Shown piece after piece: positions 28,297 through 54,000 of a DNA stretch of 64,000 nt. The notes beneath the pieces were generated by a model. The model was not told where the DNA came from. It searched no databases and saw only the letters and a list, made by a program, of their open reading frames with translations. The translations under genes and the position numbers were made by a program. The stretch's first letter is position 1. Every line of letters starts with the position of its first letter. This DNA comes from Podarcis muralis (taxonomy: Eukaryota), in the NCBI RefSeq assembly GCF_964188315.1, contig NC_135658.1:11036001-11100000 (forward strand), read 5' to 3'.

Positions 28297-28766
28297 GGTT
28301 GCGAGAGGAGAGACTTCTTTGAGCCTAAAACCTCGGGGGATCTCAGGACCGTTAGATGTGAGCGTTCCTTGCTTCCAGTTGGTGTGGCAATTTATGAGCA
28401 AGCCTGGGTGGAAACCAGCCGTGGAACGTGTGATCAGGAAGAGGTCCATTGGAGCGGTGGACAACACCCCTCTGTCCTCAGCCAATCACATTTCTCCTCC
28501 TCTGGCATCTCATCAGTTGTCTCCTATGTGGTTAGCAATGTGACTTTATTTACAGGTTGGAATGAACCCAAATTAGAGGTGGACTGATTGACCCCAGTTG
28601 AAGCCAGGACTTGCTGATCAATAACTGACAAGTCATGATGTGCAGAGTGGAAAACACCAGGCCAAATCAAGCAATATTTATTCCCAGGGTTTCAGAATCA
28701 CTGGAGGACAAAAAAACAGGCTTGCAATAACTACATGGAGAGCCATTGCTACTCCTGAAGGCAGAG

Positions 28767-31100: not shown

Positions 31101-33342
31101 CTATCTCCTCTCAGTCTCCTCTTTTCCAGGCTAAACATACCCAGCTCTTTCAAGTGCTCCTTAGAAGCAGTGCTGTAGGATAGCCACCTCTGAATATCAG
31201 CATACCAGTTTCTACCTCCTCTCTTTCAAAAGACTGTGATTATTATTTTTTAAAGTTGTGCAATGGGAAGGAAGGGAATAGAGAACACCGTTGCATGCTA
31301 GCTTGAAAACATGCCCACATTGTTATGTGCAAAAGTGCACTGGGAGATAAAGGACCCCTGTTTATTTCAAATGATATGTGTGCGCACAGCCTAAATCGGT
31401 GGTGAGAGGGCGATCTGGCTGCGACATCTGTCACCCCATTGATCGCCAGGGTTCATCTGGCTATGCCATAGTCAATGGGCATAGCCCACGAAGCAGAGGA
31501 GCCTTCAGTGAGAGCATATTGGGGCATTGCACAGTGCTTATTGTTCAAACAGGGGTGTTACAAGCTATTTCCATCTGTGAAATGTTGGAAGGGGCAGGGA
31601 CAACTACATGGCCAAGGCAGCAATCCTAGAATCAGGGACTTGAGCAGTGCCAGATTTACATATGAACTAAAGAAGGTATAGCTTAGGGTCCCACTCTCTT
31701 GGGGGGCCCGAAAAAAATTAAAGAAAAAAAAGCACTGGATGTACATTTCCAAAATATAAGATAAAAAACAAATAAAATAAAACCTACATACAGCAACAGT
31801 GTTTTGTATTGTGTAGGCTCCTATGATGTAAGTAATGGCCTGCTAGCCTGCTAGCCCGCTCCCTCAAATATCACTGGTTTGCTCATTTCTATATATAGGG
31901 TGCCTACATTCTGCATGTGCAAATGGCTTTAGATAGCTATTAGGTCCATAAATTACCATATAGCATATATTCACCACAAAAAACAGTGACAATTTGTTGT
32001 TGACAAAGGGCAGCTGGACATATAAAGGGCCCCATTACTTTCAGTAGCATAGGGCCTCATCAAACCTAAATCCAGCCCTGGACGTGAGTCCCGAACAGGG
32101 ACAGACTCAACAAAAATCTTGGTTTGATGTTACGGGAAGGTATACTAACATTTCTGGAAGACACACAGCTCTGTGGTATCACATGTGTTTTCCATGCAGG
32201 AGGTTCCAGGATTGATGCCCAGTACAGTGGTACCTCAGGTTACAGACACTTCAGGTTACAGACTCCGCTAACCCATAATAGTACCTCGGGTTAAGAACTT
32301 TGCTTCAGGATGAGACCAGAAATCGTGCTCCGGCGGCGCAGCAGCAGCAGGAGGCCCCATTAGCTAAAGTGGTGCTTCAGGTTAAGAACAGTTTCAGGTT
32401 AAGAACGGACCTCTGGAATGAATTAAGTACTTAACCCGAGGTATCACGGTATCTCCAGGCAGGGCTGGGAAGAACTCCCTGTCTGAAATCCTGGAGAGCC
32501 CCTTGGCAAAAACCCTCTTGGGGACCTTTCCTGACAGGCAAGGAGCAGTCCTCCTGTGAGGCAGCCATTTTGATTTATGCCCCTAACATGAAGTTGCTCC
32601 ATGGAAAATTAAAAGGGCTGCCTCTAACTTAGGGCCCATTCACTCTTTGCTTGTTCTGGGATTTTTTTAGTCACGGGTCGTCTGAGAGGTTTTTGTCCCT
32701 TCACTTAAGCAGGGAAATCCCATTTGATGCTTGTTCCAATTCAGCAGTAAACATCAGATTTTCCCAGTAAAAACGGCAGAGGGGGGAAAAAATCTCTCAG
32801 ACCCATGACTAGAAACCAGGTAGGGTTCAATATTTCAAAAAGTAAAAATCTGGACACAAAAGCTTTCTCTTTTTTTGACAAAGTTGGCGAGCTTTTTTTT
32901 GGTTTCCCATTGGCCAAAGTTGTTGAGTTTTATTGGCAAATCCTTTTTTAAAAAAAAGTTTTTGAGCTATTTTTTTTAGGAAATTTGCCAAAAATTACCC
33001 CACTTCCGATACAGGCTTCCATACGCCTGGATTTTCCAGGACATCTTAAAAGATTTCTGAAAATTGCGCCCGGACGCTGTTTTCAGTGGAAATTGTGGAT
33101 GTACCCTTAATCACACAGCAACACACACACAAAAAGGCTGAATTGTGGGCAGGGTACTGATGCCCTTCATTTCCTTACAGGAGCCATGTGGTGGCACAGA
33201 GCTTATCTCCAGTGAATATGATTTCAGATAGCAAGCATAATAGGCAAAGACTCCGGATGAGAGCCATTACCTGTCAGGGTAGTTGACAAATACAGGACTA
33301 GATGAAACAGTGGTCTAGGCAGCTTCAAACAATGCAAAATGC

Positions 33343-33697
33343 TTTATTAGTCTGAACTAAAAGCAATATTTAAACACCAGAAAGCAATGGAAACCCAAGG
33401 CATACGTTTGCAATGGAGTTTATAGATATCAGTTTTGTCCATAAATACCATACAGATAGCCATTTTGTTCACAAATATAATATAGATAGGAATTATGTTC
33501 ACAAATATAATATAGATAGGAATTACGTTCACAAATATCAGTGCTTGGCTTATTCAAGTAAAGTCCATGCTACACAACGTTGTGGGGTAGATGCTGCAGT
33601 CAAGGTCTCTAGATTGTCCATTGAGAGCCTTCGTTGCGCAGCCTCAGACAGAGGACCCAAGTTGTACACATGTGCAGGTACAGAAATTCAGGTTGTC
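33343..33697 (-). other. Non-coding exon 2 (3'UTR) of THRSP-2
   Basis: ttttacag acceptor at 33698, AATAAA at 33343-33348; mirrored in THRSP-3. Confidence 0.7.
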
Positions 33698-34399
33698 CTG
33701 TAAAACGGAAAATGGAAAAGGTGTTAACATGGTGGGTTGTGTCTTAATTTAAACCAAGGGTCCCTGTGACTCAGCCCTAGAACTTTACTGATAGCCAACA
33801 TGGGGTTCTCCTGATTTTATTGGGGTACTACAACTCCCATATTCCAGTCAAGTTGACCAATGGTCAGGAATGATGGGAGTTCTAGTCCGGCAACATTGGA
33901 AAGGCACCACGTTAGCTTAGCTTTCCACTTAATAAATAGCCTGAATCCCCAAACTAAGGCCTGAAATATGAATGAAGTAATATAAGATTACCCTCACCAC
34001 CGAAAGATGGACCTGCCATGTCAGAAAATGGCATTCCGTAGCCCAGCCTGTGTTGACCTGGTGGCTACAACTTCCCTCATCCACAGCCAACAATGGCCAC
34101 CAAATTAACCAGGAAGGAAGGAAGAGTTTGCAAGCCTATTTTTAAAAGCTCTTTGACTCTGTTAACAGGCAGTGCCGCAACAGGAGACTACAGTACGGTG
34201 GTGCAAAATCACCTTTTATCACATCCACTTCTATTGGCTGATGGTGGCAATGTGGAAAGTTTAAAAGCGTGGATGCATACAAACATGGAAGGAACGCAGA
34301 ATGTTTGATGCAGGAAACCAGCTGATAGAGCCTTCCACAAGCTGTGCCCACCAGATGTTTTTGACCACGGTTCCCATAGTCATGTTGGCTGCGCTTTAA

Positions 34400-34752
34400 A
34401 AAGGTAAAGAGACCCCTGATCGTTAGGTCCAGTCATGGCCCACTCTGGGGTTGTGGCACTCATCTCGCTTTGTTGGCTGAAGGGGGCCGGCGTACAGCTT
34501 CCAGGTCATGTGGCCAGCAGGACTAAGCCGCTTCTGGCAAACCAGAGCAGCGCACGGAAACACCGTTTACCTTCCCTCCGGAGCGGTACCTATTTATCAA
34601 CTTGCACTTCACGTGCTTTCGAACTGCTAGGTTGGCAGGAGCTGGGACCGAACAACGGGAGCTCACCCCGTTGCGGGGATTCAAACCATCAACCTTCTGA
34701 TCAGCAAGCCCAAGAGGCTCTGTGGTTTAACCCACAGCGCCACCCGCGTCCC
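34400..34752 (-). mobile_element. Sauria SINE in the THRSP-2 intron (orthologous to 49052-49400 in THRSP-3)
   Basis: Same insertion point in both arms; shared diagnostic tail aacgatcaggggtctcttt. Confidence 0.9.
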
Positions 34753-34835
34753 ATTGGCTGGGCTTAGGGGAGAACAATAGGTGGGAGAAGGCCGAGTGAG
34801 CCGATAACTCACCTTTGGTGTCCTTGGCGTGTGTC

Positions 34836-35231
34836 TCACCAGCGGAGAGAGATTTCGTTCTGGTTGATCTGCCCCATGATTTCATTATATTTCGAAGTCA
34901 CGGCGTTGGCCCTCCTTGTCAGCTGGGTGAGGACGCGGTGCAAGCCAGACACGTGGTAATGGAAGAGATCTTCCAGATCAGCCTTCTCTTTGCTCTCCTC
35001 TTCCTTGAGGCTGGGATTCTGGAAGTCAAGAGGTGCTAAGCCACCCTCTGCCCTCCCCTTGATGGCTTTTAGCAGAGTGTAATCTTCATACAGGTCTCTC
35101 TCGCTGGAGTCTCCGTTGCTCGAGTTGGTCTCAAATGTTTCAGCCTGGTCTTCCAAGGAGACTCCAAGGAGGAGGCTGGGAAACATCACCGTTTGCTCCA
35201 TCTTGCGGACGGCAGAGACGTATCTTTCCAT
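34836..35231 (-). CDS. THRSP: THRSP-2, 131 aa (MERYVSAVRKMEQTVMFPSLL...)
   Basis: Spot14 motifs; gccATGG Kozak; TATATAAA at 35346-35353; GTGAGT donor 23 nt after the stop. Confidence 0.95.
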   Translation of the reverse strand: MERYVSAVRKMEQTVMFPSLLLGVSLEDQAETFETNSSNGDSSERDLYEDYTLLKAIKGRAEGGLAPLDFQNPSLKEEESKEKADLEDLFHYHVSGLHRVLTQLTRRANAVTSKYNEIMGQINQNEISLRW

Positions 35232-36422
35232 GGCGATGGGTCGAGAGGGAGTCTCCGGATCTGAATTTGACTTCTTTTTCAGGGTCCCAATCTGCGCTGT
35301 GCAGGAAAGGTGAGCTGTGTTAGGTTTCAGCCTTGCTGGTGGCAATTTATATAGCAATCTTGGTCACTTCCAGAAAGCCTGAGTGGGATAGTTCCATGCC
35401 AGTTCCGGACCCTCCTTTCCCAGGGAGCCAATCCCAGCTTCCCGTGAATTGCAAGAATTTGGCAGTGACTCGTCTGTGGGTTGCAATGTGATTTTATTTA
35501 CAGTCTGGATTCTTTCCCAAACTCTTTTGCCCATATCAGCGACTTGGCATAAAGTTGGACGCTTGCGTGTTCGGGTTGCCTCCCACCCCCATAATGAAAG
35601 AGAGAGAGACCTAAATTAAGTAATCACCAAGACTGGTACTAAATTAAACAGTTTTTGGCAAGCCACACTGCTGGCAAACCACAGAAAGACTGCCTTGGAT
35701 GGTATTGCATAATTTGCACTCAGTTTGTGATAGCTGGGTCCTGCCACCATCTTGCTGTGGGGCACGTGAAGCAGAGATCTTGCAGACTGTCTTCAAACCA
35801 CAGGGCCGGAAAAAGATGTTTGGCAAGCAACCTAAGTCTGGGAATCCACGTCCGGTCTGAACATCTATACAGGGTCAAGGGCTGGGCACGAGTCTTTAGC
35901 CCAGTCTCCTCTCTGTTTAGACTTCTAATTTCAGGGACTTGGGCAGAGGTCTGTCTTGCCACCCGCAACATGAAGATGCCAGATGGAAGTAATATTTAGT
36001 GGCTAACCCCAGCAGTGATGTATGGAACTGAGAGCTGGACCATAAAGAAGGCTGATCGCCGAAGAATTGATGCCTTTGAATTCTGGTGCTGGAGGAGACT
36101 CTTGAGAGTCCCATGGACTGTAAGAACAAACCGATCCATCCTGAAGGAAATCAGCCCTGAGTGCTCACTGGCAGGACAGATCCTGAAGCTGAGGCTCCAA
36201 TACTTTGGCCACCTCATGAGAAGAGAAGGCTCCCTGGAAAAGACCCTGATGTTGGGAAAGATGGGCACAAGGAGAAGGGGACGACAGAGGACGAGATGGT
36301 TGGACATTGTTCTCAAAGCTACCAGCATGAGTTTGACCAAACTGCGGGAGGCAGTGGAAGACAGGAGTGCCTGGCGTGCTCTGGTCCATGGGGTCACGAA
36401 GAGTTGGACACGACTAAATGAC

Positions 36423-36466
<44 letters not shown>

Positions 36467-37070
36467 TTATTATTTGTACCCCACCCATCTGGCTGGGTTT
36501 CCCCAGCCACTCCGGGCACCTTCCAACAAAGATTAAAAATACATCAAAATGTCATACATTAAAAACTTCCCTGAACAGGGCTGCCTTCAGATGTCTTCTA
36601 AATGTCAGGTAGTTCTTTATCTCCTTGACATCTGATGGGAGGGCGTTCCACAGGGTGGGAGCCAGTGTGGTGTAGTGGTTAAGAGCAGTAGTCTCGTAAT
36701 CTGGGGAACCGGGTTCGCGTCTCCGCTCCTCCACATGCAGCTGCTGGGTGACCTTGGGCCAGTCACACTTCTTTGAAGTCTCTCAGCCCCACTCACCTCA
36801 CAGAGTGTTTGTTGTGGGGGAGGAAGGGAAAGGAGAATGTTAGCCGCTTTGAGACTCCTGAAGGGGAGTGAAAGGCGGGATATCAAATCCAAACTCTTCT
36901 TCTTGAGAGCCAGTGTGGTGTAGTGGTTAAGAGCGGTGGACTCGTAATCTGGGGAACCAGGTTCGCTTCCCCGCTCCTCCACATGCAGCTGCTGGGTGAC
37001 CTTGGGCCAGTCACACTTCTCTGAAGTCTCTCAGCCCCACTCACCTCACAGAGTGTTTGTTGTGGGGGAG

Positions 37071-37277
37071 TTACAGATAGGTAGCCGTGTTGGTCTGCCA
37101 TAGTCAAAACAAAAAAAATTCCTTCCAGTAGCACCTTAAAGACCAACTAAGTTAGTTCTTGGTATGAGCTTTCGTGTGCATGGTATCTGAAGAAGTGTGC
37201 ATGCACACGAAAGCTCATACCAAGAACTAACTTAGTTGGTCTTTAAGGTGCTACTGGAAGGAATTTTTTTTGTTTTG
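37071..37277 (+). mobile_element. Penelope-like element terminal fragment with inverted duplication
   Basis: About 15-bp TSD TTTGTTGTGGGGGAG; 78-bp perfect inverted arms; CTGAAGAAG...CGAAAGCTC motif typical of PLE pseudo-LTRs. Confidence 0.75.
37181..37222 (+). ncRNA. Minimal type I hammerhead ribozyme motif
   Basis: UGGUAU-CUGAAGA-A-GUGUGC(AU)GCACAC-GAA-AGCU-C/AUACCA: 6-bp stem I, 6-bp stem II, palindromic AGCU in place of stem III. Confidence 0.7.
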
Positions 37278-40200
37278 TTGTGGGGGAGGAAGGGAAAGGA
37301 GAATGTTAGCCGCTTTGAGACTCCTGAAGGGGAGTGAAAGGCGGGATATCAAATCCAAACTCTTCTTCTTCTTCTACTGAGAAGGCCCTCTGCCTGGTTC
37401 CATGTAGCTTTGCTTCTCGCAATGAGGGAACTGCCAGAAGGCCCTCAGCGCTGGACCTCAGCGTCCGGGCAGAATGATGGGGGTGGAGACGCTCCTTCAG
37501 GTCTACTGGGCCGAGGCCGTTTAGGGCTTTAAAGGTCAACACCAACAAACTGCTTAGGAATGTAGGAAGCTAACTTATAGAGAGTAATAGAATTGGTCCA
37601 TCTAGCTCCCACGGCAAGTGCTCTCAAGCTGATCGGCAAGGGGTCTCAAGCAGGGTCATTGGGCGAGAGACCTTGCGTATAATATACACTGGTACCTCAA
37701 ACTTTATCTGTTCTGGAAGTCCGTTCCAAAACCAAAGCGTTCCAAAACCAAGGTGTGCTTTCCCATAGAAAGTAATGCAAAACAGATTAATCCATTCCAG
37801 ACTTTTGAAAACAACCCCTAACACAGCAATTTAACATGAATTTTACTCTCTAACGAGACAATTGATCCATAAAATGAAAGCAATCGTCAATGCACTGCAC
37901 TATAAAATAAATAAGTCAGTATTGTAGATGTTAAAAATTAAAATATTTTTTTTTCTTAACTGCACTGATGATAGTCATTGTTTGGATGGGGGGGGGGGTA
38001 TCCATTTTACGCAGTCACACAATCCAATCGGTAGCTGAACTGGGTTCCACACAGTCACAAAAACAAATTAACCGAAAAAGCCTCAAAAACAAAAATGCAA
38101 AATAAATAGCAAAAACAAAAGTGCCAAACTTAATCCATTACGGAAGTCCGTTTGACTTCCGAAATGTTCAAAAACCGAGCCGTGGCTTCTGATTGGTGCA
38201 GGTGCCCCGGAAACAATAGCTGACAGCTGCATCGGATGTTCAGCTTCCAAAAAATGTATCAAAAACCAGAACACTTACATCTGGGGTTTTGGTGTTTGGG
38301 AACCAAAGCGTTTGAGAACCAAGGTGTTTGAGAACCAAGGTACCACTGTACAACTTACAGCATAGGACAAGTTATGGAACTGGAATTTGAAATTCACAGT
38401 ATGTTACATGTTGAAAGAAAACTATATGAAAATGATGCTGGTATTTAACTCCTAGTAAATTAGCAAAAAATGTATAAAACAGGGTCAAATATATGCTGGA
38501 AATGTAACGAAAAAGAAGGCACCTTTTATCATAAGTGGTGGAATGTAAGGCAGTAAAAAGGGGGGGGGGGGTGATATATAATGAATTGGGAATTTAAAAA
38601 ACAGCAACAACCAAGAAGCCTTTCTTTTAGGAATTCTAGGTGCCAAAGTCCCAATGGAGCAGAAAAGACTATTTATGTATGTGACCATAGCTGGTCAGAT
38701 ATTAATGGTCCAGAGATGGAAATAAGACAAAGTCCCGGCCAGAGAAGAATGGCAGATTAATTTGATGGACTCTGCTGAAATGGCAAAATTGACCGGAAGA
38801 ATCAGAAATCAGGAAGACCAAAATTTTAATAAGGAATGGGGAAAATTTATAATTTATCTTAAAAACCTTTATAAAAGGCTAAAAATCATTAGTAGGCTTG
38901 GAATAACACTGGTAGTTTAATGTTGAACTTTGGATATAACGGAGATGAAAAAGAATTAGTAAGGTAAAGGGACCCCTGAGCATTAGGTCCAGTTGTGACC
39001 AACTCTGGGGTTGCGGCGTTCATCTCGCTTTATTGGCCGAGGGAGCCGGCATACAGCTTCTGGGTCATGTGGCCAACATGACTAAGCCACTTCTGGCGAA
39101 CCAGAGCAGAGCATGGAAACGTCGTTTACTTTCCCGCCGGAGCGGTACCTATTTATCTACATGCACTTTGACGTGCTTTCGAACTGCTAGGTTGGCAGGA
39201 GCTGGGACTGAGCAACGGGATTCGAACCGCTGACCTTCTGATCGGCAAGTCCTAGGCTCTGTGGTTTAACCCACAGCGCCGATGCAGGAGGAAATATTCA
39301 ACAAAAGGACCCACAAAGGGGAAGAGGGAAGGTCAGGAGATTCTTTGGAACCTTGTTTTGATGTTGGTTGTTGATAATTGACTGTAAAACTTTTATTTTT
39401 TTAAAAAAAAATTATTTTTTTTTTAAAAAAAGAGTTTCAAGCAGGGAAACGCTTTCCTCCCTACCTGGAGGTGGTGAGGACTGAACATGAGATCTTCTGC
39501 ATGTACAGCAGATGCTCTGCTGCTGAGTATTTCAACTTTTGTGGGTTTATTTACAATGCTGGAGCATGCCTGATCAGTTCTAGCCTCTTAATGGTCAGCA
39601 CCAAACAACAACCAGACACACATAGACCCAGAATAGAATGTAAATACTTTTGGATGCTTAACCCCATCAAAACAGTCCTTGAGCAGTGATGTTGTCTTTC
39701 AATGGACGAATGAGAGAGAGAAAGGGATGTTCTCTGTTTTGGGATGTGTCTCCTGAGCAGTTCATCACAGGCCAGATACACACATGGCTGTCTAGCCAAA
39801 CAGGGTATTGCATGGGCAGACAAGTGGGGTGATAACTTGGGCAAAGGGTTTGTGCCACCTGCCCCAGACTGAGTGAGCATGTGTTTGCTGGTTGATCATC
39901 ACCCAACCAGACACCAATTGTCGAAGGGAACGCACAAGGTTTGGGAAAAGTTCAGGGATCTTTGTTGCATTTCTTACACCAGACAAACACCAGCCTTTTG
40001 GGAACTGGAATTCAGGGTTGTCTAGTGAGTGGATTGGCAGCAGATTCAGGTGTCAAATATAGACTTGATAAGTAAAGGTAAAGGACCCCTGGACGGTTAA
40101 GTCCAGTCAAAGGCGACTATGGGGTTGCGACGCTCATCTCATTTTCAGGCTGAGGGAGCTGGCGTAATTAAGGACTACACTGCCTTACAGTGGTTTTATT

Positions 40201-40682
40201 AGGGAGTTAGAGAAATTCATGTAGGGAACTCAATAGCTACCAGGCCAAAGAGAACCTTGCCTGTAATGACCAGTGGGACGATACTTGGTGCTGGTGTTGA
40301 CCTTTAAAGCCCTAAACGGCCTCGGTCCTGTATACCTGAAGGAGCGTCTCCACCCCCGTCGTTCTGCCCGGACACTGAGGTCCAGCACCAGGACCTTCTG
40401 GAGGTTTCCTCACTGTGAGAAGCAAAGCTACAGGCAACCAGGCAGAGGGCCTTCTCGGTAGTGGCGCCTGCCCTGTGGAACGCCCTCCCATCAGATGTCA
40501 AAGAGATAAACAACTACATGACATTTAGAAGACATCTGAAGGCAGCCCTGTTTGGGGAAGTTTTTAATGTGTGACATTTTGATGTATTTTTAATCCTAGT
40601 TGGAAGCCGCCCAGAGTGGCTGGGGAAACCCAGCCAGGTGGGTGAATAATAAATAATAATAATTATTATTATTATTATTATT

Positions 40683-40732
<50 letters not shown>

Positions 40733-41463
40733 CGTCAGACATGTCTTTGGTGGCAGGTAATCGAGCCAGCCAGCTCCAGAAGGGCAACTGTGTCCATTTA
40801 TTGCAGCAAGGAACAGCATTGTGCTGCATGGGGTAGTTGACAAGATGTCATGGACTGGCTGGATTGCAGAGGGTTAGGTGAAAGCCAGATGTCCAGTGCC
40901 AATTTGCCAAATGGAAAAATTCCTGCCTGGCCCCAAATACGGCGGCCGACTAAGTCCTTAGAAAAGTCAAAACGTCAGTAAAAGCAATCAAATTCAGGGT
41001 GGGTAGGTGGGAGATCGGACAAAAGAGCAGGGAAGACTGCCAGGCAGGCCACAATTTAACACCCCATGGAGTGGGCCCACGCGTCCTCATTGGCTGGTTG
41101 TGCCCGCCGTCAGAGGAAAGCCTATTCAAGGTCTACTGGCATTGGCAAATAGCCGGCAGCCAGGTGATCCCAGCTGCCATTTGCTGGATCACTTGCGTGG
41201 CCCGCGGCCTGGACGTGACACCACCCACCGCAGAAGGTGAGCGGACGTCCTCTAACTCTCCACTTTTCCAGACTAAACCTGCCCAGCTCCTTCAACTGTT
41301 CCTCATCAGACCTGGTTTCCAGACCCTTGATCATCTTGGTTGCCCTCCTCTGCACATGTTCCAGCTTGTCAATATCCTTCTTAAATTGATCCTTATTATT
41401 GAAATGTTTGCCGCCTTGTTTCCTTCAGGAGGAAGGGTGGGATATAAATTAAAATAATAGTAA

Positions 41464-41515
<52 letters not shown>

Positions 41516-44500: not shown

Positions 44501-44576
44501 AAGATTTAACTACTCTCACCACTTACAGCCCACCTTGAATTGCATTTGGCACCTCAAGATACCTGTAAGCTGTAGA

Positions 44577-44980
44577 CCAGGGGTCGCCAACCTAAGGCCC
44601 ACGGGCTTGGAGCAACCCACGGAGGCTGTTTAACAGGCCCACAAGCCACCCCCGAACAGAGCCGCCCGCTCAGCGAGTCCCCACACAATGCGCTAAACCA
44701 CCGCAGCGCAGGGACTCTCTTCTGTGGCTCCGGAAATTGCTTCTGCGCATCCCCAGACTCTGGAAATCGCATCTGCGCATGTCTGCGGTTCCGGAAATCG
44801 CTTCTGGGCATGCCCAGACACAGAAAATCGCTTCTGCACAGGCACAATTTTCAGCATCTGGGCATGCGCAGAAGCGATTTCTGGCACTTCGGACATGCGC
44901 AGACGCGATTTCTGGCGTCACGCTGTGCCAGCCTGGCCCACGGAGGATCTCCGCGGGAGTGATCTGGCCCATGCCCTTGC
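44577..44980. mobile_element. hAT MITE (CAGGGGTCGGCAACC family) directly upstream of the THRSP pseudogene
   Basis: Terminus and internal GCGCAGAAGCGATTTCCGG repeats shared with copies at 2305-2550 and 3929-4292. Confidence 0.75.
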
Positions 44981-45012
44981 TGTAGACACAGGGAAAATCT
45001 CACCTCCTAGCT

Positions 45013-45505
45013 ATGGGAGGTTCCTTCTCTGCTGTGCAGAAGATGGAGTAGCTTCGGAAGAGCCAGACGACACATTTGAAGCTGACTCTGATGGGGGCCA
45101 AAAGTGACGCAGGTGGCGCTGTGGGTTAAACCACAGAGCCTAGAACTTGCCGATCAGAAGTTCGGCGGTTCAAATCCCTGCGGAGGGGTGAGTGCCCGTT
45201 GTTCAGTACCTGCTCCTGCCAACTGAGCAGTTCAAAAGCACGAAGTGCAAGTAGATAAACAGGTACCGCTCCGGCGGGAAGGTAAATGGCATTTCCGTGT
45301 GCTGCTCTGGTTCGCCAGAAGCGGCTTAGTCAAGCTGTCTGCGGACAAACGCCGGCTCCCTCGGCCTATAGAGCGAGATTAGCGTGCAACCTCAGAGTCG
45401 GTCACGACTGGACCTAATGGTCAGGGGTCCTTTTACTGATGGTGGCCAAGAGCTGTATGAATATTACACACAGGTGAAATCCACGAAGCAGTCAGCAGAA
45501 GACAT
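45013..45505 (+). pseudogene. THRSP: THRSP pseudogene (THRSP-1-like) with a premature stop, an internal deletion and a SINE insertion
   Basis: ATG GGA GGT TCC TTC TCT GCT GTG CAG AAG ATG GAG TAG aligns to THRSP-1 ATG GAA GAT TAC TTC TCT GCA GTC CGC AAG ATG GAG CAA; then EPDDTFEADSDGGQ, a SINE, then ELYEYYTQVKSTK (THRSP-1: DNTPEADSGGKDLYDYYTLLKSIK). Confidence 0.85.
45103..45436 (+). mobile_element. Sauria SINE inserted into the THRSP pseudogene
   Basis: TSD TGATGG(G/T)GGCCAA at 45089-45101 and 45437-45449. About 15 further Sauria SINE copies, e.g. 9433-9850, 12268-12590, 23482-23860, 27410-27755, 38960-39282, 52303-52650, 62910-63210. Confidence 0.9.
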
Positions 45506-45566
45506 TCACGAGGGGTTCAAAAACGAGGAAGCGGTTTTGTGCTGCTGTGAGGTCCTCCATCCTATA

Positions 45567-45998
45567 CAGTGGTGCCTCGCAAGACGAAAAGAATCCGTTC
45601 CGCGAGTCTCTTCGTCTTGCGGTTTTTTCGTCCTGCGAAGCAAGCCCATTAGCGGATTAGCGGATTAGCGCTATTAGCGGGCTTAGCGGATCAGCTGATA
45701 AGCGGCTTAGCGGATCAGCTGATTAGCGGCTTAGCGGATCAGCTGTTAAGCGGCTTAGCGGATCAGCTGATAAGCGGCTTAGCGATCAGCTGTTAAGCGG
45801 CTTAGCGGATCAGCTGATAAGCGGCTTAGCGGCTTGGGGAAAAGGGGAGGGGGAACCCTGCAGGAACTCGCAAGACATTTTCGTCTTGTGAAGCAAGCCC
45901 ATAGGAAATTCGTTTTGCGAAGCACCTCCAAAACGGAAAACCCTTTCGTCTAGCGGGTTTTCTGTCTTGCGAGGCATTCGTCTTGCAGGGCACCACTG
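45567..45998. mobile_element. Tc1/pogo-type MITE, family B, with an internal (GCGGCTTA/GCGGATCAGCTG) tandem array
   Basis: CAGTGGTGCC..GCAAGACGAA TIRs, TA TSD; copies at 2555-2893 and 20168-20522. Confidence 0.85.
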
Positions 45999-46559
45999 TA
46001 CTCAGGTTGCATATAGGTGTTTCTTTCTGCTGCTGGTTTCCATGGCATCTTTGGGGAGGGGCAAGATGTTGCAGGAGACCTCTGCCCCAGGCCCTGAAGA
46101 GGCTATGGACGTGCCAGTCAGAATAGATGGAACCGGGCTAGATGAACAAGTTGCTTGATCTGGGGCTAAGGCATCTTCTATTGCATCTTCCAGCCCTTGC
46201 CCTGACCCTGACCATGTATCAGTGTTCAGAGGGGAGCTGGATTTCCAGACTGAAGCCATTGCCAAACATCTTTGCCCACAAAATCTCTGCTTCTCATGAC
46301 CCCCGCAAAATGGTAGTATGAACCATCTATCACAAACGGAGCCCAAATTATGCAATCATTCTCCTGGCACCCTCCCTGTGCTTGCTGAAGGCCAGGAAAG
46401 TGCCTTGCCAAACGTTGTTAGGAAATTTCCATTCAGTGCAAGCCCAGATTATAGCTTGATTTAGATTTCTCTGCCTCTCTCTGATTATTGGTCAGAATTG
46501 TGGAGCTGGAAGGGACTTTCAGAACGTTCTAGTCCAGCTCTTACCACCAGAAAGTTCCT

Positions 46560-48245
46560 CCTGATGTTTAGTGGACTCTCTGTTCTTGTAACTTGAAGTC
46601 ACTGGTTCAAGTCCCACCCTCCAGAGCAGGAGAAAACCAGCTTGCTCCATCTTCAATGTGACAGCCTTTCGGATATTTGAAGAAGGCTGTCATATCTCCC
46701 CCTCAGTCTCCTCTTTTTCCAGGCTAAGCATACACAGCTCCTTCAACCGTTCCTCATCAGACCTGGTTTCCAGATCCTTGATCATCTTGGTTGCCCTCCT
46801 CTGCACACCTTCCAGCTTGTCAACATCCTTCTTAAATTGTGGTGCCCAGAACTGGACACAGGACTCCGGGTGTGTTCTGACCAAGGCAGAATAGAGTGGG
46901 ACTATTACTTTCCTTGATCAGGACACTAGACCTCTTGATGCAGCCTAGAATAGGATTAGCTCTTTTTGCTGCTGCATCACGTGGTTGACTCATGCTAAGC
47001 TTGTGGTCCACCAAGACCCCTAGATCCTTTTCACATGTACTGCTTGCGAGACAGATGTTCGCCTTCATAAATTACTGCAGTTGATTATTCCTGCCTTACA
47101 TTTCTCCCTGTAGAAATTCATTTTGTTAGTTTTGGCCCAATTCTCCAATCTGTTAAGGTCATCTTGAACCCTGATTCTGTCTTCTGCAGCATTAGCTACC
47201 CCTCCCATTTTGGTGTCATCTGCAGATTTGATGAGTATCCCCTCAGTTCCTTTGTCCAAGTCATTTAAAAAGAGGTTGAACAACAATGGGCCCAGTACAG
47301 AACCCTGCGGCACCCCACTCGGCACTTATTTCCAGGATGATAAAAAGGTAAAGGTACCCCTGCCCATACGGGCCAGTCTTGCCAGACTCTAGGGTTGTGC
47401 GCCCATCTCACTCAAGAGGCCGGGGGCCAGCGCTGTCCGGAGACACTTCCGGGTCACGTGGCCAGCGTGACAAGCTGCATCTGGCGAGCCAGCGCAGCAC
47501 ACGGAACGCCGTTTACCTTCCTGCTAGTAAGTGGTCCCTATTTATCTACTTGCACCCGGGGGTGCTTTCGAACTGCTAGGTTGGCAGGTGCTGGGACTGA
47601 GCGACGGGAGCGCACCCCGCCGCGGGGATTCGAACCGCCGACCTTTCGATCGGCAAGTCCTAGGCACGGAGACTTTTACTCACAGCGCCACCCGCGTCCC
47701 TCCAGGATGATAAGGAACCATTAATGAGCACTCTTTGGGTTTGGTCAGTCAACAAGCTACAAATCCACCTAAAAGTTACCTCATCCAGCCCACAATTTAC
47801 CCACTTCTCTGGGTTATCATGGGGGACCTTACTGAAATCAAGATACAGTGGTACCTCGGGTTAAGTACTTAATTCGTTCTGGAGGACTGTTCTTAACTTG
47901 AAACTGTTCTTAACCTGAAGCACCACTTTAGCTAATGGGGCCTCCCGCTGCCGCTGCACGATTTCTGTTCTCATCCTGAAGCAAAGTTCTTAACCTGAGG
48001 TAACATTTCTGGGTTAGTAGAGTCTGTAACCTGAAGCGTATGTAACCTGAAGCGTATGTAACCCGAGGTACCACTGTACATTATGTCCACTGCGTCCCCC
48101 TGATCCACCAAGTTTGTAACTCTATCAAAGAAAAAAGTGAGATTTGTCTGACATGACTTGTTTTTGAAAAACCCATGCTAGGTCTTAGTAATCACAGCAT
48201 CCATTTTGAAGTGTGCTCAGACTGACTGTTTAATTATCTGTTCAA
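46560..48245 (-). mobile_element. CR1 LINE fragment interrupted by a Sauria SINE and a Tc1/pogo MITE
   Basis: CR1 RT-region translations (GVPQGSVLGPLLFN, ADDTK); other CR1 pieces at about 29.6-30.5k, 41.2-41.4k, 63.2-63.5k. Confidence 0.85.
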
Positions 48246-48279
48246 GGACCCTGGTGGCAAGTAGCTGATAGAGGCAAAA

Positions 48280-48470
48280 GGGTTTGAGAAAGAATCTGGG
48301 AAAGAATCCAGACTGTAAATAAAATCACATTGCAAGCCACAGACGAGTCACTGCCAAATTCTTGCAATACACGGGAAGCTGGGATTGGCTCCCTGGGAAA
48401 GGAGGGTCTGGAACTGGCATGGAACTATCCCACTCAGGCTCTCTGGAAGTGACCAAGATTGCTATATAAA
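48280..48470 (+). promoter_or_regulatory. THRSP-3 proximal promoter: forkhead-like and C/EBP-like block, inverted CCAAT (48384-48388), TATA (48463-48470)
   Basis: Motifs visible in the sequence; mirrored at 35346-35530 and partly conserved at 28388-28560. Confidence 0.7.
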
Positions 48471-48584
48471 TTGCCACCAGCAAGGCTGAAACCTAACACA
48501 GCTCACCTTTCTTGCACAGCGCAGATTGGGACCCTGAAAAAGAAGTCAAATTCAGATCCGGAGAATTCCTCTCGACCCATCGCC

Positions 48585-48980
48585 ATGGAAAGATACGTCT
48601 CTGCCGTCCGCAAGATGGAGCAAACGGTGATGTTTCCCAGCCTCCTCCTTGGAGTCTCCTTGGAAGACCAGGCTGAAACATTTGAGACCAACTTGAGCAA
48701 TGGAGACTCCAGCGAGAGAGACCTGTATGAAGACTACACTCTGCTAAAAGCCATCAAGGGGAGGGCGGAGGGTGGCTTAGCACCTCTTGACTTCCAGAAT
48801 CCCAGCCTCAAGGAAGAGGAGAGCAAAGAGAAGGCTGATCTGGAAGATCTCTTCCATTACCACGTGTCCGGCTTGCACCGCGTCCTCACCCAGCTGACGA
48901 GGAGGGCCAACGCCGTGACTTCTAAATATAATGAAATCATGGGGCAGATCAACCAGAACGAAATCTCTCTCCGCTGGTGA
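48585..48980 (+). CDS. THRSP: THRSP-3, 131 aa, one amino acid different from THRSP-2 (S37L)
   Basis: Inverted near-identical copy of THRSP-2; TATATAAA at 48463-48470; GTGAGT donor at 49004. Confidence 0.95.
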   Translation: MERYVSAVRKMEQTVMFPSLLLGVSLEDQAETFETNLSNGDSSERDLYEDYTLLKAIKGRAEGGLAPLDFQNPSLKEEESKEKADLEDLFHYHVSGLHRVLTQLTRRANAVTSKYNEIMGQINQNEISLRW

Positions 48981-50101
48981 GACACACGCCAAGGACACCA
49001 AAGGTGAGTTATTGGCTCACTCAGCCTTCTCCCACCTATTGTTCTCCCCAATGGGACGCGGGTGGTGCTGTGGGTTAAACCACAGAGCCTAGGACTTGCC
49101 GATCAGAAGGTCGGCGGTTCAAATCCCCATGACGGGGTGAGCTCCCGTTGCCCGGTCCCTGCTCCTGCCAACCTAGCAGAAAGCACGTAAAGTGCAAGTC
49201 GATAAATAGGTACCGCTCCGGTGGGAAGGTAAACGGTGTTTCTGTGCGCTGCTCTGGTTCGCCAGAAGCGGCTTAGTCATGCTGGCCACATGACCCGGAA
49301 GCTGTACACAGGCTCCCTCGGCCAGTAAAGCAAGATGAGCGCCGCGACCCAAGAGTCGGCCACGACTGGACCTAACGATCAGGGGTCTCTTTACCCTTTT
49401 TAAGCCTAGCCAACATAACTATGGGAACCATGGTCAAAAAGATCTGGTGGGCTCAGCTTGTGGAAGGCTCTATCAGCTGGTTTTATGCATCAAAGTTTCT
49501 GCTTTCCTTCCATGTTTGTATGCATCCATGCTTTTAAACTTTCCACATGGCGACCATCGGCCAATAGAAGTGGATGTGATAAAACATGATTTTGCACCAC
49601 CGTACTGTAGTCTCTTGTTGCGGCACTGCCTGTTAACAGAGTCAAAGAGCTTTTAAAAATAGGCTTGCAAACTCTTCCTTCCTTCCTGGTTAATTTGGTG
49701 GCCATTGTTGGCTGTGGTTGAGGGAAGTTGTAGCCACCAGGTCAACACAGGCTGGGCTGCGGAATGCCATTTTCTGACATGGCAGGTCCATCTTTCGGTG
49801 CTGAGGGTAATCTTATATTACTTCATTCATATTGCAGGCCTTAGTTTTGGGATTCAGGCTATTTATTCAATGGAAAGCTAAGCCAATGTGGTGCCTTCTC
49901 AATGTTGCCGGATTAGAACTCCCATCATTCCTGACCATTGGTCAACTTGACTGGGAATATGGGAGTTGTAGTACCCCAAGAACATCAGGAGAACCCCATG
50001 TTGGCTATCAGTAAAGTTCTAGGGCTGAGTCACAGGGACCCTTGGTTTAAATTAAGACACAACCCACCTTGTTAACACCTTTTCCATTTTCCATTTTACA
50101 G

Positions 50102-50456
50102 GACAACCTGAATTTCTGAACCTGCACATGTGTACAACTTGGGTCCTCTGTCTGAGGCTGTACAAAGGAGGCTCTTAACGGACAATCTAGAGACCTTGAC
50201 TGCAGCACCTACCCCACAACGTTGTGTAGCATGGACTTTACTTGAATAAGCCAAGCACTGATATTTGTGAACGTAATTGCTATCTATATTATATTTGTGA
50301 ACGTAATTGCTATCTATATTATATTTGTGAACAAAATGGCTATCTGTATGGTATTTATGGACAAAACTGATATCTATTAACTCCATGGCAAACGCATGCC
50401 TTGGGTTTCCATTGCTTTCTGGTGTTTAAATATTGCTTTTAGTTCAGACTAATAAA
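50102..50456 (+). other. Non-coding exon 2 (3'UTR) of THRSP-3
   Basis: ttttacag acceptor at 50101, AATAAA at 50451-50456. Confidence 0.7.
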
Positions 50457-50924
50457 GCATTTTGCATTGTTTGAAGCTGCCTAGACCACTGTTTCATCTA
50501 GTCCTGTAGTTGTCAACTACCCTGACATGTAATGGCTCTCATCTGGAGTCTTTGCCTATTATGCTTGCTATCTGTGCCACCACATGGCTCCTGTGAGGAA
50601 ATGAAGGGCATCAGTGCCCTGGCAGGACCCACAATTCAACTTTCTCTCTTTTCCTCTGTGTTGGTTTACTGAGTCTAGGGGCCGCCATTTTCCATGGAGT
50701 GATGTCATCGTAGGGGTATACATTAGAATGGCAGGTGCAAGCGAGAGCTGCTATTGGCTGTCCCTGCTAGGAGGCCCCACCCCCCAGTATAGTATTTTGC
50801 TAAGGCATTCTTCCAACCTGGAGCTGGCCAGGATTTCAGATAGGGATCCCTTCCCAGCCCTGGGGATACTGGGGATTGAACATGGGACTCACATACAGCG
50901 TACCACAGAACTGTCTTTCACCAG

Positions 50925-51052
50925 AAGCTGGGATAGCTCAGTCAGTAGAGCATGAGGCTCTTAACCTGAGGGTCATGAGTTTGAGACCCATGTCGGGCAA
51001 AAGATTTCTGCATCTACAGGGGCTCGAACCAAATGTCCCTTGTGGTTCTATG
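50925..51052 (+). mobile_element. tRNA-Lys(CTT)-derived SINE with a CR1-like tail
   Basis: Head GCTGGGATAGCTCAGTCAGTAGAGCATGAGGCTCTTAACCTGAGGGTC resembles tRNA-Lys; ends in TTCTATGAT; short TSD CCAGAA; absent from the mirror arm. Confidence 0.7.
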
Positions 51053-54000
51053 ATCCAGAAATTTTGGCAGACCTTCCCATAACATCAAACTGAGATTTTA
51101 GCTGAGTCCAAGAAGGAATTCTCAATCCCCGTTAGGGACTTTCTTCGCCCACCGATTCTACGATTGCCACCTTTCCCAGGTTAGGGTTCCTGCTCTTTTA
51201 AGAACACCCTTTTCAGCCTTTTACAAATGTAAATGACTTGTGACACCTGCTCTCCTAACAGGAAGAACCTAAGATGTGTATAATCATTGCTGAAGTCTCC
51301 TCTGCTCCATGGGCTAAATTTGTTAATGTTGGCAGGCTGTTCTCTGCTGCTTTAAGCTGTTGCGCCAACATGTCCTCTGCAATGCACTAAGATCTTTTTC
51401 CCCAGTGTGCTTTTGTACATACTTTGCAGTTGCACGCACTGTCACATCATCCAAAGCTCTTGTTATAAGAAAAACTGCTCCCTTTCCCATATGGGGTATT
51501 CCAGAGCCCGTATAGAGTCCTTAAGTGGGTTCCCTATCTGTAGGAGAAAACAACAGAGGCCAACCAGAGTATATTGAGAAGCAAAGTGGCTAGTAAGCCT
51601 GGTCTTTATTCAAGGAACTGTTGTAACAGGGTCCCCACACACCACACGCAGGAGGGAGGAGAACCCTGAACAATGGTGCACAAGCCGTTCTATAGACGCT
51701 TTAAATTGCCCACCCTGTAGCCCAAGACCACCACCACCACCCCAAAACATCATACATGCATCACAGAAGGAGGCAGTCTATAGCAGAAATCTTGTCTGCC
51801 AGGATACCTGACAATGGTCCCTGATTGCATTACCTGGGCAACCTGGCCATTCTTTGGTGATGGTTAATACTGTAGTTCCTGAATCCAGGTCTCAGGTTCA
51901 CCCGATTCATACACAAATATGCCCTTAAGACAGGATTTGCAAGCAAAAAGACAACTCCATTTGCCTCCCTTACTGCAGAGGAATATTTGAGCTCATTGGG
52001 AGAGTCAAAATGACTTCAGGATTGCTCCCCTGTTCTATTTCAGACACATGGTTCATATATTTAGATATGTGTGCATTTAAGAATAATAGAAGTATTTAAA
52101 CAGTGACCAGCACTCCAAAACACGTTCCAGGTTGAGACACCTGGGCTCCTTCCAGGAGACACGAGAATTTATGGGACTCCAGAGCATGGTGTGAAACCAG
52201 TAAAAGTCGATGTTATACAGTTATGGGCAATATCGTGGCTAAGCCAAAGAAACCCAAGGACCAGTGTGGCGCAGAAGTTAAAAGTGTCACACTAGAACAC
52301 TGGGACGTGGGTGGCGCTGTGGGTTAAACCACAGAGCCTAGGACTTGCAGAAGGTCGGCAGTTCGAATCCCCACGACGGGGTGAGCTCCCATTGCTTGGT
52401 CCCTGCTCCTGCCAACCTAGCAGTTCGAAAGCATGTCAAAGTGCAAGTAGATAAATAGGTACCACTACGGCGGGAAGGTAAACGGCGTTTCTGCGCGCTG
52501 CTCTGGTTCGCCAGAAGCGGCTTAGTCATGCTGGCCCATGACCCAGAAGCTGTACGCCGGCTCCCTTGACCAATAAAGCGAGATGAGCACCGCAACCCCA
52601 GAGTCGGCCACGACTGGACCTAACGGTCAGGGGTCCCTTTAGCTTTACCTAGAACCTGAGAGACCAGGGTTTGAATCCCTGCTTGGCCACAAAGCTCACT
52701 GGGTGACCTCGGGCCAATAGGGTGTGTTAACAATTTTCAGCTTTCAAATTCCCAAAATGAGGGGTGGAATTCAAATTACCTTTTCAATTCAAAAGACATT
52801 TTGGTTAAGTTAATATAATTTTATTTTGCTCAGTAAGTGAAACATGTGTAAGTTTCCATAGAAATGGTTAAAAACGATTGACAAGTATTTCCAGTTATGT
52901 TACATATTAATATTCTTTTCATCTATTAGCATTATTATTATTTAGCATGACCTGACATTTTCAGAAGGAAAATTAAAATTCTTTGGTTCCCCCCCAAAGC
53001 AGTTTATGTGCTTCTTCACCAAATGTAGACTTACTAAGCTAAATGTTGTCCAATCACAAGAGTAACAGCAGATTTGAATTCTTCACACCCAAAAACGTAT
53101 TTTGAAGATCCCTCGCTGAATAAATTTGCAAAATTTAAGTTTCACCCCCTCTGAAATGATGCACCCTATTTGTCCAGTAACTCACGCTCAGCCAAACCTC
53201 CTTTGCTGCGTTGCTGTGAGGATAAATTGGGGAGTTGTTCTACGTATGCCTTATCCGTGGGATATAAACGTAATTAATTAGTTCATTGCTGGTTTACAGA
53301 GGTACACTTCGCTTGAACATGGATGCTTGCCTTAGCTGCCAAAGACACCCATAGGCCTAATCTGCAGGAATTTGTTTTTAATAGCCATGCCTTGTGGCGG
53401 CGAATCCCATGCATCAGTTACACGTTCTGGGAATTAACATTCTTCCCTATCGCCTCCTTGAATCTGCTGCCAAACAGCTCCATCCAGCGATGTCGAATTC
53501 TGCTGTTATCCTTCCGCAAACTGCTCCAACCTTATGTCCCCCTTGGTTTTTAATAAATGTGCAGCTGGCTGAGAGATGATCAACCTTCAGTCACATGCTT
53601 GGACTCAGCCAGGAGCTCCCAGGGCAGGTGACACCAACCCATGTCCCGAGACAAGAACTGATGGTACCAAAATATGTTTGTTTGCTTTGAAAGAAGCGCA
53701 TGATTCCCCAAACTTGTCCTGTAGCCAGGAAATAGCTACCAAAACTGGTAGCAGGTCTCAGGGCCGGATTTAGGTTTGATGAAACCCTAAGCTACTGAAA
53801 GTAATGGGGCCCTTTATATGTCCAGCTGTCCTTTGTCAACAACAAATTGTTGTTGTTTTTTGTGTTGAATATATGCTATATGGTAATTTATGGACCTAAT
53901 AGGTATCTAAAGCTATTTGCACATGTTGCCATGCAAGCAGTCCATGCAGAATGTAGGCACCCTATATATAGAAAGGAGCAAACCAGTGATATTTTAGGGA

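What the first reader, a model, noticed from the sequence alone, without database searches (positions are those of the whole stretch)
31320..51420. Head-to-head inverted arms with a steep identity gradient, suggesting gene conversion
Arms 31320-35550 and 48255-51420 flank a spacer of about 12.7 kb. By eye, identity is about 98% in the CDS and high in the promoter, intron and 3'UTR. It drops to roughly 70-80% with arm-specific insertions distal to about 33130/50640 (e.g. tttcacagatggaaatagcttgtaacacc vs ttttacaaatgtaaatgacttgtgacacc). One recent duplication would give uniform divergence. An old inversion with a homogenised core fits palindrome-arm gene conversion, and the structure could also mediate recurrent inversion of the spacer.
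Basis: partly seen in the sequence, partly recalled or inferred. Interest (0 to 1): 0.7.

Follow-up and report, generated by a model that had tools for sequence, protein, structure and literature searches.

The report
Lizard THRSP gene pair kept alike
Two back-to-back copies of a fat-metabolism gene (THRSP/Spot 14) in a wall lizard come from a very old mirror-image duplication whose 2.4 kb centre has been repeatedly copied from one arm to the other in each lizard lineage. The stretch between the copies is flipped in the common lizard, so this is a clear but ordinary case of a known process.

Summary
Arms 33139-35527 and 48289-50638 are inverted, 12,761 bp apart. Each carries an intact 131-aa Spot_14 gene, transcribed divergently. 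Core identity is 95.4% overall (CDS 98.2%). It drops within less than 90 bp, a cliff rather than a gradient, to weak collinear homology (62-84% in local matches) that reaches 31324/51421.

In four lacertids the two copies pair by species in both CDS and non-coding core trees, and orthology by position is rejected (p-AU 5e-37 and 1e-4). The distal flanks instead pair by position, with an A/B split about as deep as the split from Rhineura.

Three further results point to conversion:
- A Podarcis-specific SINE sits at the same site in both arms.
- In Lacerta, A-type sequence runs about 330 bp further into arm B.
- In Rhineura and Elgaria the divergent partner is a distinct B-type gene. In lacertids only a B-type pseudogene remains, inside the spacer (45013-45500).

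The Zootoca spacer is inverted relative to Podarcis and Lacerta, and that state is derived.

This is a new member of a known kind (palindrome or inverted-repeat concerted evolution with inversion by recombination between the arms). The scan noted another palindrome (RPS29/7SL) elsewhere in this genome. No reads could be laid, so expression and orientation polymorphism are untested.

The parts
33139..35527 (-). Arm A homogenised core: about 300 bp promoter/5'UTR, THRSP-A CDS, candidate intron with SINE, candidate 3' exon
48289..50638 (+). Arm B' homogenised core, the mirror image of arm A
34836..35231 (-). THRSP-like gene A, 131 aa plus stop, Pfam Spot_14 (E 1.6e-34)
48585..48980 (+). THRSP-like gene B' (A-type), 131 aa plus stop, Spot_14. 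Differs from A by 7 nt (1 nonsynonymous, S37L)
35528..48288 (.). Unique spacer, 12,761 bp. Same orientation as in P. raffonei and Lacerta agilis, inverted in Zootoca vivipara
31324..33138 (-). Arm A distal part of the old duplication, not homogenised. Orthologous by position across lacertids. Carries arm-specific repeats at 31645-32081 and 32232-32451
50639..51421 (+). Arm B' distal part of the old duplication, not homogenised. Homologous to the downstream of Rhineura A, not of Rhineura B
35704..35888 (-). Old A-type upstream element next to arm A, outside the homogenised core
46198..46356 (+). Its diverged copy (68.6%) upstream of B', separated from the core by about 1.9 kb of B-specific sequence that includes dispersed repeats
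34397..34756 (-). tRNA-like SINE in the candidate intron of A. Same insertion site and target-site duplication as in B'. Empty site in Lacerta, Zootoca and Rhineura
49049..49402 (+). The same SINE insertion in arm B'
45013..45500 (+). Pseudogene of the ancestral B-type THRSP partner, with frameshift, stop codons and a SINE insertion. Best matches Rhineura B
27907..28299 (-). THRSP-like gene C (tandem with A, 76% nt identity). Internal control that evolves by ordinary orthology
33343..33348 (-). Conserved AATAAA, a candidate poly(A) signal about 170-210 bp inside the distal boundary (partner at 50451-50456 +). Not verified by RNA

Best explanation
The locus is an old inverted duplication of the A-type THRSP (Spot 14) transcription unit. 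It spans at least 4.5 kb: window 31324-35888, copied as 51421-46198. It arose before the last common ancestor of Podarcis, Lacerta and Zootoca, which is the Lacertini crown (about 38 Ma, published range 15-47 Ma, PMC6733905). The flank divergence suggests it is far older than that. Since then, recombination between the two arms on the same chromosome has repeatedly copied a 2.4 kb core from one arm to the other (non-allelic gene conversion). The core comprises about 300 bp of promoter, the single-exon CDS, a candidate intron and a candidate 3' exon. As a result the two genes evolve in concert within each lineage, while sequence outside the core diverges normally. The tract ends where homology breaks. 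On the spacer side this is a B-specific block shared by all lacertids. On the distal side it is a (GT)n/(CT)n low-complexity patch with indels. A crossover outcome of the same recombination inverted the spacer in the Zootoca lineage. The original divergent partner (B-type gene, intact in Rhineura and Elgaria) decayed to a pseudogene and now lies inside the spacer. Shown here: the structure, the age relative to speciation, concerted evolution, lineage-specific tracts and the orientation difference in Zootoca. Inferred: the molecular route (break repair using the other arm as template), the exon/intron assignment, and that both copies are expressed.
For: 1. Structure and step-like identity profile.
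2. The same divergent pair is present in Lacerta agilis (8.4 kb apart), Zootoca (23.4 kb) and P. raffonei (19.2 kb), with C on the A side in all three and NDUFC2 called beyond B in the Zootoca locus.
3. The CDS tree pairs A and B by species (Pw 90/88, Pr 95/93, La 100/100, Zv 98/94). AU tests reject a positional A clade (p 5e-37) and a clade joining lacertid B with outgroup B (p 5e-58).
4. The non-coding core tree gives the same result (La 100/100, Zv 100/100, Pr 93/96) and rejects the positional clade (delta lnL 419, p 1e-4).
5. Core identity is 94-99.8% within species against 90-94% between genera at the same position.
6. Distal blocks D1 and D2 cluster by position (A clade 100/99, B clade 100/100 and 100/99). 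A-B identity there is 52-63%, as deep as the split from Rhineura A.
7. A Podarcis-only SINE with the same target-site duplication lies in both arms of both Podarcis. The site is empty in all Lacerta, Zootoca and Rhineura arms.
8. Lacerta arm B carries A-type sequence about 330 bp beyond the boundary kept by Podarcis and Zootoca.
9. Nested younger tracts exist: Lacerta promoter plus CDS 99.3% against 94-95% downstream, and P. raffonei intron 99.8% against 96.4%.
10. In the outgroups Rhineura and Elgaria the A/B partners are only 73-76% identical in nucleotides, and B-type forms its own clade (98/95) with no lacertid member.
11. Gene C, in the same cluster, follows the species tree.
12. Inversion: Pw_A-upstream matches Zv_B-upstream (3775 nt in the same orientation against 262 nt for Zv_A). 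Pw_B-upstream matches Zv_A-upstream (2439 against 77 nt in the opposite orientation). Matches run right up to the arm edge. The B pseudogene lies on the A side and on the same strand as A only in Zootoca.
Against: Between the two Podarcis species the core is about as different within a species (2.5-4.2%) as between species (3.6-4.6%). Species-type sites (24) outnumber position-type (7) and cross-type (7) sites, but singletons dominate (131). Conversion is therefore episodic on a scale of millions of years, not continuous. No clear GC bias was found (W>S 47 vs S>W 32 among changes fixed in both arms). The Zootoca inversion rests on one assembly and could not be checked with reads. Gene structure and expression are unverified because no reads could be laid. 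It is not settled whether the duplication predates the split from amphisbaenians. The Rhineura locus ends 808 bp beyond its B gene.
Confidence: 0.88

Rival explanations
1. A single recent inverted duplication of a 2.4 kb THRSP segment in this species. The weak distal similarity would be chance or shared repeats.
For: High identity with abrupt ends. A global alignment sees no distal homology.
Against: The pair occurs with the same proximal boundary and position-specific flanks in four species of three genera. The distal blocks are colinear and homologous to the downstream of Rhineura A in both arms. They form deep position-wise clades.
Confidence: 0.02
2. Independent, parallel duplications of gene A in each lacertid lineage. 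This would also make the copies pair by species.
For: Species-wise pairing of copies.
Against: It would need the same insertion point, the same boundaries, and B-side flanks that are orthologous across genera and 40-50% diverged from the A side. The shared B pseudogene lies next to the same spacer end.
Confidence: 0.02
3. Strong purifying selection on a conserved transcription unit, rather than sequence exchange, keeps the two old copies alike.
For: The core roughly matches the promoter-to-poly(A) unit. In the window's own pair, 6 of the 7 CDS differences are synonymous.
Against: The same core differs by 6-10% between genera but only 0.2-5.6% between paralogues within a species, including synonymous and candidate intron sites. 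Lineage-specific substitutions are shared by both arms. A young SINE is present in both arms. Selection cannot copy an insertion.
Confidence: 0.03
4. Assembly artefact: a collapsed or mis-joined haplotype creates a false inverted copy, or a false orientation in Zootoca.
For: Near-identical repeats are classic sources of misassembly. No read-level check was possible.
Against: The pair appears in independent assemblies of at least four species, with both proteins also annotated in P. lilfordi and P. muralis. The arms differ at over 100 sites and have unique flanks. The only gap in the window is far away (8401-8531). For the Zootoca orientation alone, an artefact remains possible (about 0.2).
Confidence: 0.03

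Closest known systems
Saccharomyces chromosome XIV 'flip/flop' region (Salzberg et al. 2022, PMC9731477)
   Same: A gene-bearing inverted repeat of a few kb (4 kb there, 2.4 kb here) is homogenised within each species. It flanks a unique region (24 kb there, 8-23 kb here) whose orientation differs among lineages because of recombination between the repeats.
   Different: In yeast the orientation is polymorphic within species and re-inversion is shown to be recurrent. Here only one fixed difference between genera is seen. The arm genes here are a vertebrate lipogenesis regulator. Arm identity is lower (95-98%).
Mammalian sex-chromosome palindromes with arm-to-arm gene conversion (e.g. X palindromes, Jackson et al. 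2021, PMC8981503; Y palindromes, from my own knowledge)
   Same: Inverted arms around a unique spacer. The arms are older than speciation yet more alike within a species than between species. The arms carry intact genes.
   Different: Those arms are typically above 8 kb and above 99% identical, lie on sex chromosomes and show GC-biased conversion. This one is short, probably autosomal (my inference from the size of the 107.5 Mb record), 95-98% identical, and its GC bias is inconclusive.
Eutherian FLNA-EMD region flanked by inverted repeats with recurrent inversion (Caceres et al. 2007, from my own knowledge, not checked here)
   Same: Inverted duplicates evolve in concert across many species, and the segment between them has inverted in some lineages.
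   Different: There the genes lie in the spacer, not the arms, and many independent inversions are documented. Here there is one.
RPS29/7SL palindrome in the same wall-lizard genome (scan note s1-152571)
   Same: Inverted gene-bearing arms reported as conserved across squamates and kept alike by conversion.
   Different: Different genes and a different locus. I did not test that note.

Membership tests
Palindrome / inverted-repeat pair under concerted evolution (arm-to-arm gene conversion) | Two arms in inverted orientation around a unique spacer | tested here: met
   Arms 33139-35527 / 48289-50638, spacer 12,761 bp
Palindrome / inverted-repeat pair under concerted evolution (arm-to-arm gene conversion) | The duplication predates speciation (orthologous arms and flanks in several species) | tested here: met
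   The same pair, boundaries and position-specific flanks occur in four lacertids. Distal trees cluster by position
Palindrome / inverted-repeat pair under concerted evolution (arm-to-arm gene conversion) | Arms cluster within species rather than by position | tested here: met
   CDS and non-coding core trees. AU p 5e-37 and 1e-4
Palindrome / inverted-repeat pair under concerted evolution (arm-to-arm gene conversion) | Direct trace of sequence transfer (insertion or flank sequence copied to the other arm) | tested here: met
   Podarcis-specific SINE in both arms. A-type distal sequence in Lacerta arm B
Palindrome / inverted-repeat pair under concerted evolution (arm-to-arm gene conversion) | GC-biased fixation in the converted region | tested here: inconclusive
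   W>S 47 vs S>W 32. Core GC 0.46-0.49 vs 0.448 in Rhineura
Palindrome / inverted-repeat pair under concerted evolution (arm-to-arm gene conversion) | Very high arm identity (above 99%) and long arms (above 8 kb), as in classical sex-chromosome palindromes | tested here: not met
   2.4 kb arms, 95.4% identity. It works like a palindrome but is a small inverted gene pair
Inverted-repeat-mediated inversion (NAHR flip) | Spacer orientation differs between lineages, with breakpoints inside the arms | tested here: met
   Zootoca against Podarcis and Lacerta. Flank matches run up to the arm edges, and the B pseudogene is on the A side. Assembly-level evidence only
Inverted-repeat-mediated inversion (NAHR flip) | Recurrence, or polymorphism within species | not testable with these tools
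No long-read evidence
THRSP / Spot 14 family (Pfam PF07084) | Spot_14 domain over the whole protein | tested here: met
   E 1.6e-34, 3.9e-34 and 3.3e-30 for A, B' and C
THRSP / Spot 14 family (Pfam PF07084) | Synteny with NDUFC2, as at the tetrapod THRSP locus (from my own knowledge of human 11q14.1) | tested here: met
   An NDUF_C2 gene lies downstream of Zootoca B. Scan note s1-152653 places NDUFC2 just beyond the window end

The most novel reading that the evidence does not exclude
The THRSP palindrome may be a true flip-flop. On this reading the spacer, which carries the B pseudogene and any upstream regulatory DNA, re-inverts recurrently and is polymorphic within lacertid species. Homogenisation would be favoured because lacertids replaced the lost B-type paralogue with a second A-type dose. 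That would make it a tractable autosomal vertebrate model for the balance between conversion and crossover at short inverted repeats.
Probability: 0.2. Interest if true: 0.6.

Novelty: new member of a known kind. Interest (0 to 1): 0.45.

Why it matters
This is a compact and unusually well-delimited natural example of concerted evolution on what is probably an autosome of a reptile. The core is 2.4 kb. In the two Podarcis species compared four ways, its edges switch within tens of bases. The proximal edge lies within about 45 bp of the same place in all four species, while the distal edge has moved in Lacerta and Zootoca. Lineage-specific tracts, a hitch-hiking SINE, a decayed ancestral partner and one spacer inversion are all visible.

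It shows that gene trees of lacertid THRSP copies cannot be read as orthology. It also shows that annotations naming these genes 'MID1IP1-like' hide a lineage-specific replacement of the B-type paralogue by a second A-type copy. It gives a concrete place to measure tract length, boundary control by homology breaks, and inversion rate in squamates. It does not reveal a new mechanism.

Tried and rejected
- Global MAFFT alignment of the whole arms and a nine-sequence alignment of the distal regions failed, because arm-specific repeats break colinearity. I replaced them with sensitive local searches and block-wise alignments anchored on Rhineura.
- GC-biased conversion was tested and is inconclusive.
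- Heterogeneity inside the window's own core is significant only because of the CpG-rich SINE (p 1e-7 with it, 0.055 without it). I therefore do not claim nested tracts in this species, although Lacerta and P. raffonei show them.
That used its only call, so nothing was laid.
As a result a third Podarcis, the Sceloporus B-type locus and the region beyond Rhineura B could not be fetched.
- I considered whether arm B' is the ancestral B gene overwritten by A. I rejected this because a separate B-type pseudogene persists and because the diverged flank of B' is A-type.
- No formal GENECONV run was made. Tree incongruence with AU tests was used instead.
- The N run at 8401-8531 was left untouched.
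Full report
**1. What is in the window**

An inverted-repeat search finds three colinear high-identity blocks that together cover 33225-35527 and 48289-50574, 12.8 kb apart. A self-BLAST joins them into one match, 33139-35527 against 50638-48289.

Each arm holds an intact 131-codon ORF: 34836-35231 on the minus strand and 48585-48980 on the plus strand. Both hit Pfam Spot_14 at E about 1e-34. The 5' ends face the spacer, so the pair is divergent ('head-to-head').

A third Spot_14 gene, C, lies at 27907-28299 in tandem with A and is 65% identical in protein.

The two CDS differ at 7 of 396 nt, six of them synonymous.

A re-alignment of the core gives 108 mismatches in 2343 sites:
- promoter/5'UTR: 97.0%
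- CDS: 98.2%
- downstream: 94.7-96.7%
- a SINE shared by both arms: 89.4%, with 18 of its 37 mismatches at CpG

Without the SINE, the core is not significantly heterogeneous (p 0.055).

**2. The edges**

A global alignment drops to random similarity outside 33139-35527. A sensitive local search finds four colinear inverted matches further out, at 62-84% identity, reaching 31324/51421. Arm A has two dispersed-repeat insertions there that arm B lacks.

The old duplicated unit is thus about 4.5 kb, of which only the central 2.4 kb is nearly identical.

In a four-way comparison with P. raffonei, variable sites are all 'position-type' outside the core. Inside it they are singletons or 'species-type'. 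The switch occurs within gene coordinates 9705-9712 and 12056-12094 (window 35520-35527 and 33138-33176). This is a cliff, not a gradient.

The distal edge lies in a (GT)n/(CT)n low-complexity patch with indels, about 170-210 bp beyond a conserved AATAAA. The proximal edge abuts B-specific sequence that is shared by all lacertids examined.

**3. Other species**

A protein search and cluster look-up showed that Podarcis raffonei, P. lilfordi, P. muralis, Lacerta agilis and Zootoca vivipara each have two near-identical copies. Each pair shares species-specific substitutions.

The loci were fetched for L. agilis, Z. vivipara and P. raffonei, and for the outgroups Rhineura floridana, Sceloporus undulatus and Elgaria multicarinata. 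All three lacertids show the same divergent pair, 8.4, 23.4 and 19.2 kb apart, with gene C beyond A in each. NDUFC2 is called beyond B in the Zootoca locus.

Within each species the arms are 94-99.8% identical over a core that starts about 300-340 bp upstream of the ATG.

**4. Test of concerted evolution**

*CDS tree.* The A and B copies pair by species (90/88, 95/93, 100/100 and 98/94). Gene C follows the species tree. AU tests reject a clade of the positional A copies (p 5e-37). They also reject a clade joining lacertid B copies with outgroup B genes (p 5e-58).

*Non-coding core.* A tree of 1412 non-coding core columns gives the same result, with the Lacerta and Zootoca pairs at 100/100. The positional clade is rejected (delta lnL 419, p 1e-4).

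*Identities.* Core identity between genera at the same position is 90-94%, lower than between paralogues within a species.

*Distal flanks.* Two distal blocks anchored on Rhineura give position-wise clades (A 100/99; B 100/100 and 100/99). A-B identity there is only 52-63%, as deep as the split from Rhineura A.

Windowed comparisons show the same switch along the arm.

**5. Direct traces of transfer**

- A 355 bp tRNA-like SINE with the same target-site duplication lies at the same site in both arms of both Podarcis species. All four Lacerta and Zootoca arms, and Rhineura, have the empty site. Because the duplication predates these genera, the insertion must have been copied from one arm to the other.
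- In Lacerta, arm B carries A-type sequence for about 330 bp beyond the boundary that Podarcis and Zootoca retain. This is a lineage-specific extension in the A-to-B direction.
- Lacerta and P. raffonei show nested younger tracts: 99.3% against 94-95%, and 99.8% against 96.4%.
- Between the two Podarcis species the core is about as diverged within as between species. Exchange is therefore episodic.

**6. Origin of the pair**

In Rhineura and Elgaria the gene divergent from A is a distinct B-type paralogue. It is 73-76% identical to A in nucleotides and forms its own clade at 98/95.

Lacertids have no intact B-type gene. A relic lies in the spacer at window 45013-45500 on the plus strand. It has a frameshift, stop codons and a SINE insertion, carries B-type residues, and best matches Rhineura B. 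In Lacerta the match is 76.8% in nucleotides, against 64-65% to A-type. The relic is present in all four lacertids.

The diverged distal flank of the right-hand arm matches the downstream of Rhineura A, not of Rhineura B.

The right-hand gene is therefore an A-type inverted duplicate (B'), not a converted B. No A-type upstream element is seen in the 808 bp beyond Rhineura B. This hints that the duplication is lacertid-specific, but the locus ends too soon to be sure.

**7. Inversion**

The spacer end next to arm A in Podarcis and Lacerta lies next to arm B in Zootoca, and the reverse also holds. Matches run up to the arm edges.

The B pseudogene is divergent from A in Podarcis, Lacerta and the outgroups, but lies on the A side and on the same strand as A in Zootoca. 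The Zootoca state is therefore derived. It fits a crossover between the arms.

This rests on one assembly.

**8. Mechanism and comparison**

The simplest account is repair of breaks in one arm using the other arm as template. Non-crossover outcomes give conversion tracts bounded by homology breaks, and a crossover outcome gives the inversion. This is inferred, not shown.

The closest known systems are:
- the yeast flip/flop region (PMC9731477)
- mammalian sex-chromosome palindromes (PMC8981503)
- from my own knowledge, the FLNA-EMD inverted repeats

The arms here are shorter and less identical than in classical palindromes, and GC bias is not demonstrable.

The split of Podarcis from the other Lacertini is the Lacertini crown, dated at 37.6 Ma with published estimates of 15-47 Ma (PMC6733905). 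This gives a minimum age for the structure.

**9. Limits**

I sent none of those letters to a search tool afterwards.
- The look-up of encoding contigs withheld the P. lilfordi DNA and then closed.
- Exon/intron structure, expression of both copies and orientation polymorphism within species remain untested.
- The assembly gap at 8401-8531 was left alone.
- The scan had already noted the pseudogene (s1-179076) and another palindrome in this genome (s1-152571).

Noticed in passing
window 37105-37182 / 37200-37277, and 36656-37370: A perfect 78-nt inverted repeat with a 17-nt loop lies in the spacer, inside a block of 95-100% tandem or direct repeats.
   Followed up: no
window 30664-31098 and 36009-36437 (also 56340-56678 and 54641-54879): Direct copies (93%) of a roughly 435-bp dispersed repeat lie outside arm A on both sides: beyond its distal end, and in the spacer past the upstream element. 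More copies lie near 54.6-56.7 kb. This is probably a transposable-element family.
   Followed up: no
L007 (Rhineura) 809-1201 minus and 16885-17256 plus: Intact B-type and C-type Spot_14 ORFs are present but not called as genes in the record's annotation. Only the A-type gene is called.
   Followed up: partly
L003 (Zootoca arm A) about 11666 onward: Arm A of Zootoca loses homology to all other arms about 400 bp before the usual distal boundary, by an insertion or deletion. This shortens the Zootoca core.
   Followed up: partly
window 34397-34756 / 49049-49402: Inside the shared SINE, a short variant block (gene coordinates about 10520-10581) is shared crosswise: this species' arm A with P. 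raffonei arm B, and the reverse. This is a mosaic that suggests exchange in both directions or old two-arm polymorphism.
   Followed up: partly
window 34792-34835 / 48981-49010: A GGTGAGT motif conserved in all lacertids and Rhineura lies 23 nt after the stop codon. It is a candidate splice donor that would put the SINE in an intron. It is unverified because no RNA could be laid.
   Followed up: no
   Followed up: no
L008 (Sceloporus): The Sceloporus locus holds 6649 N. Only the A-type and C-type genes are visible within 10 kb. Its B-type gene (probably P0043, by its lower identity to A) was not located.
   Followed up: no
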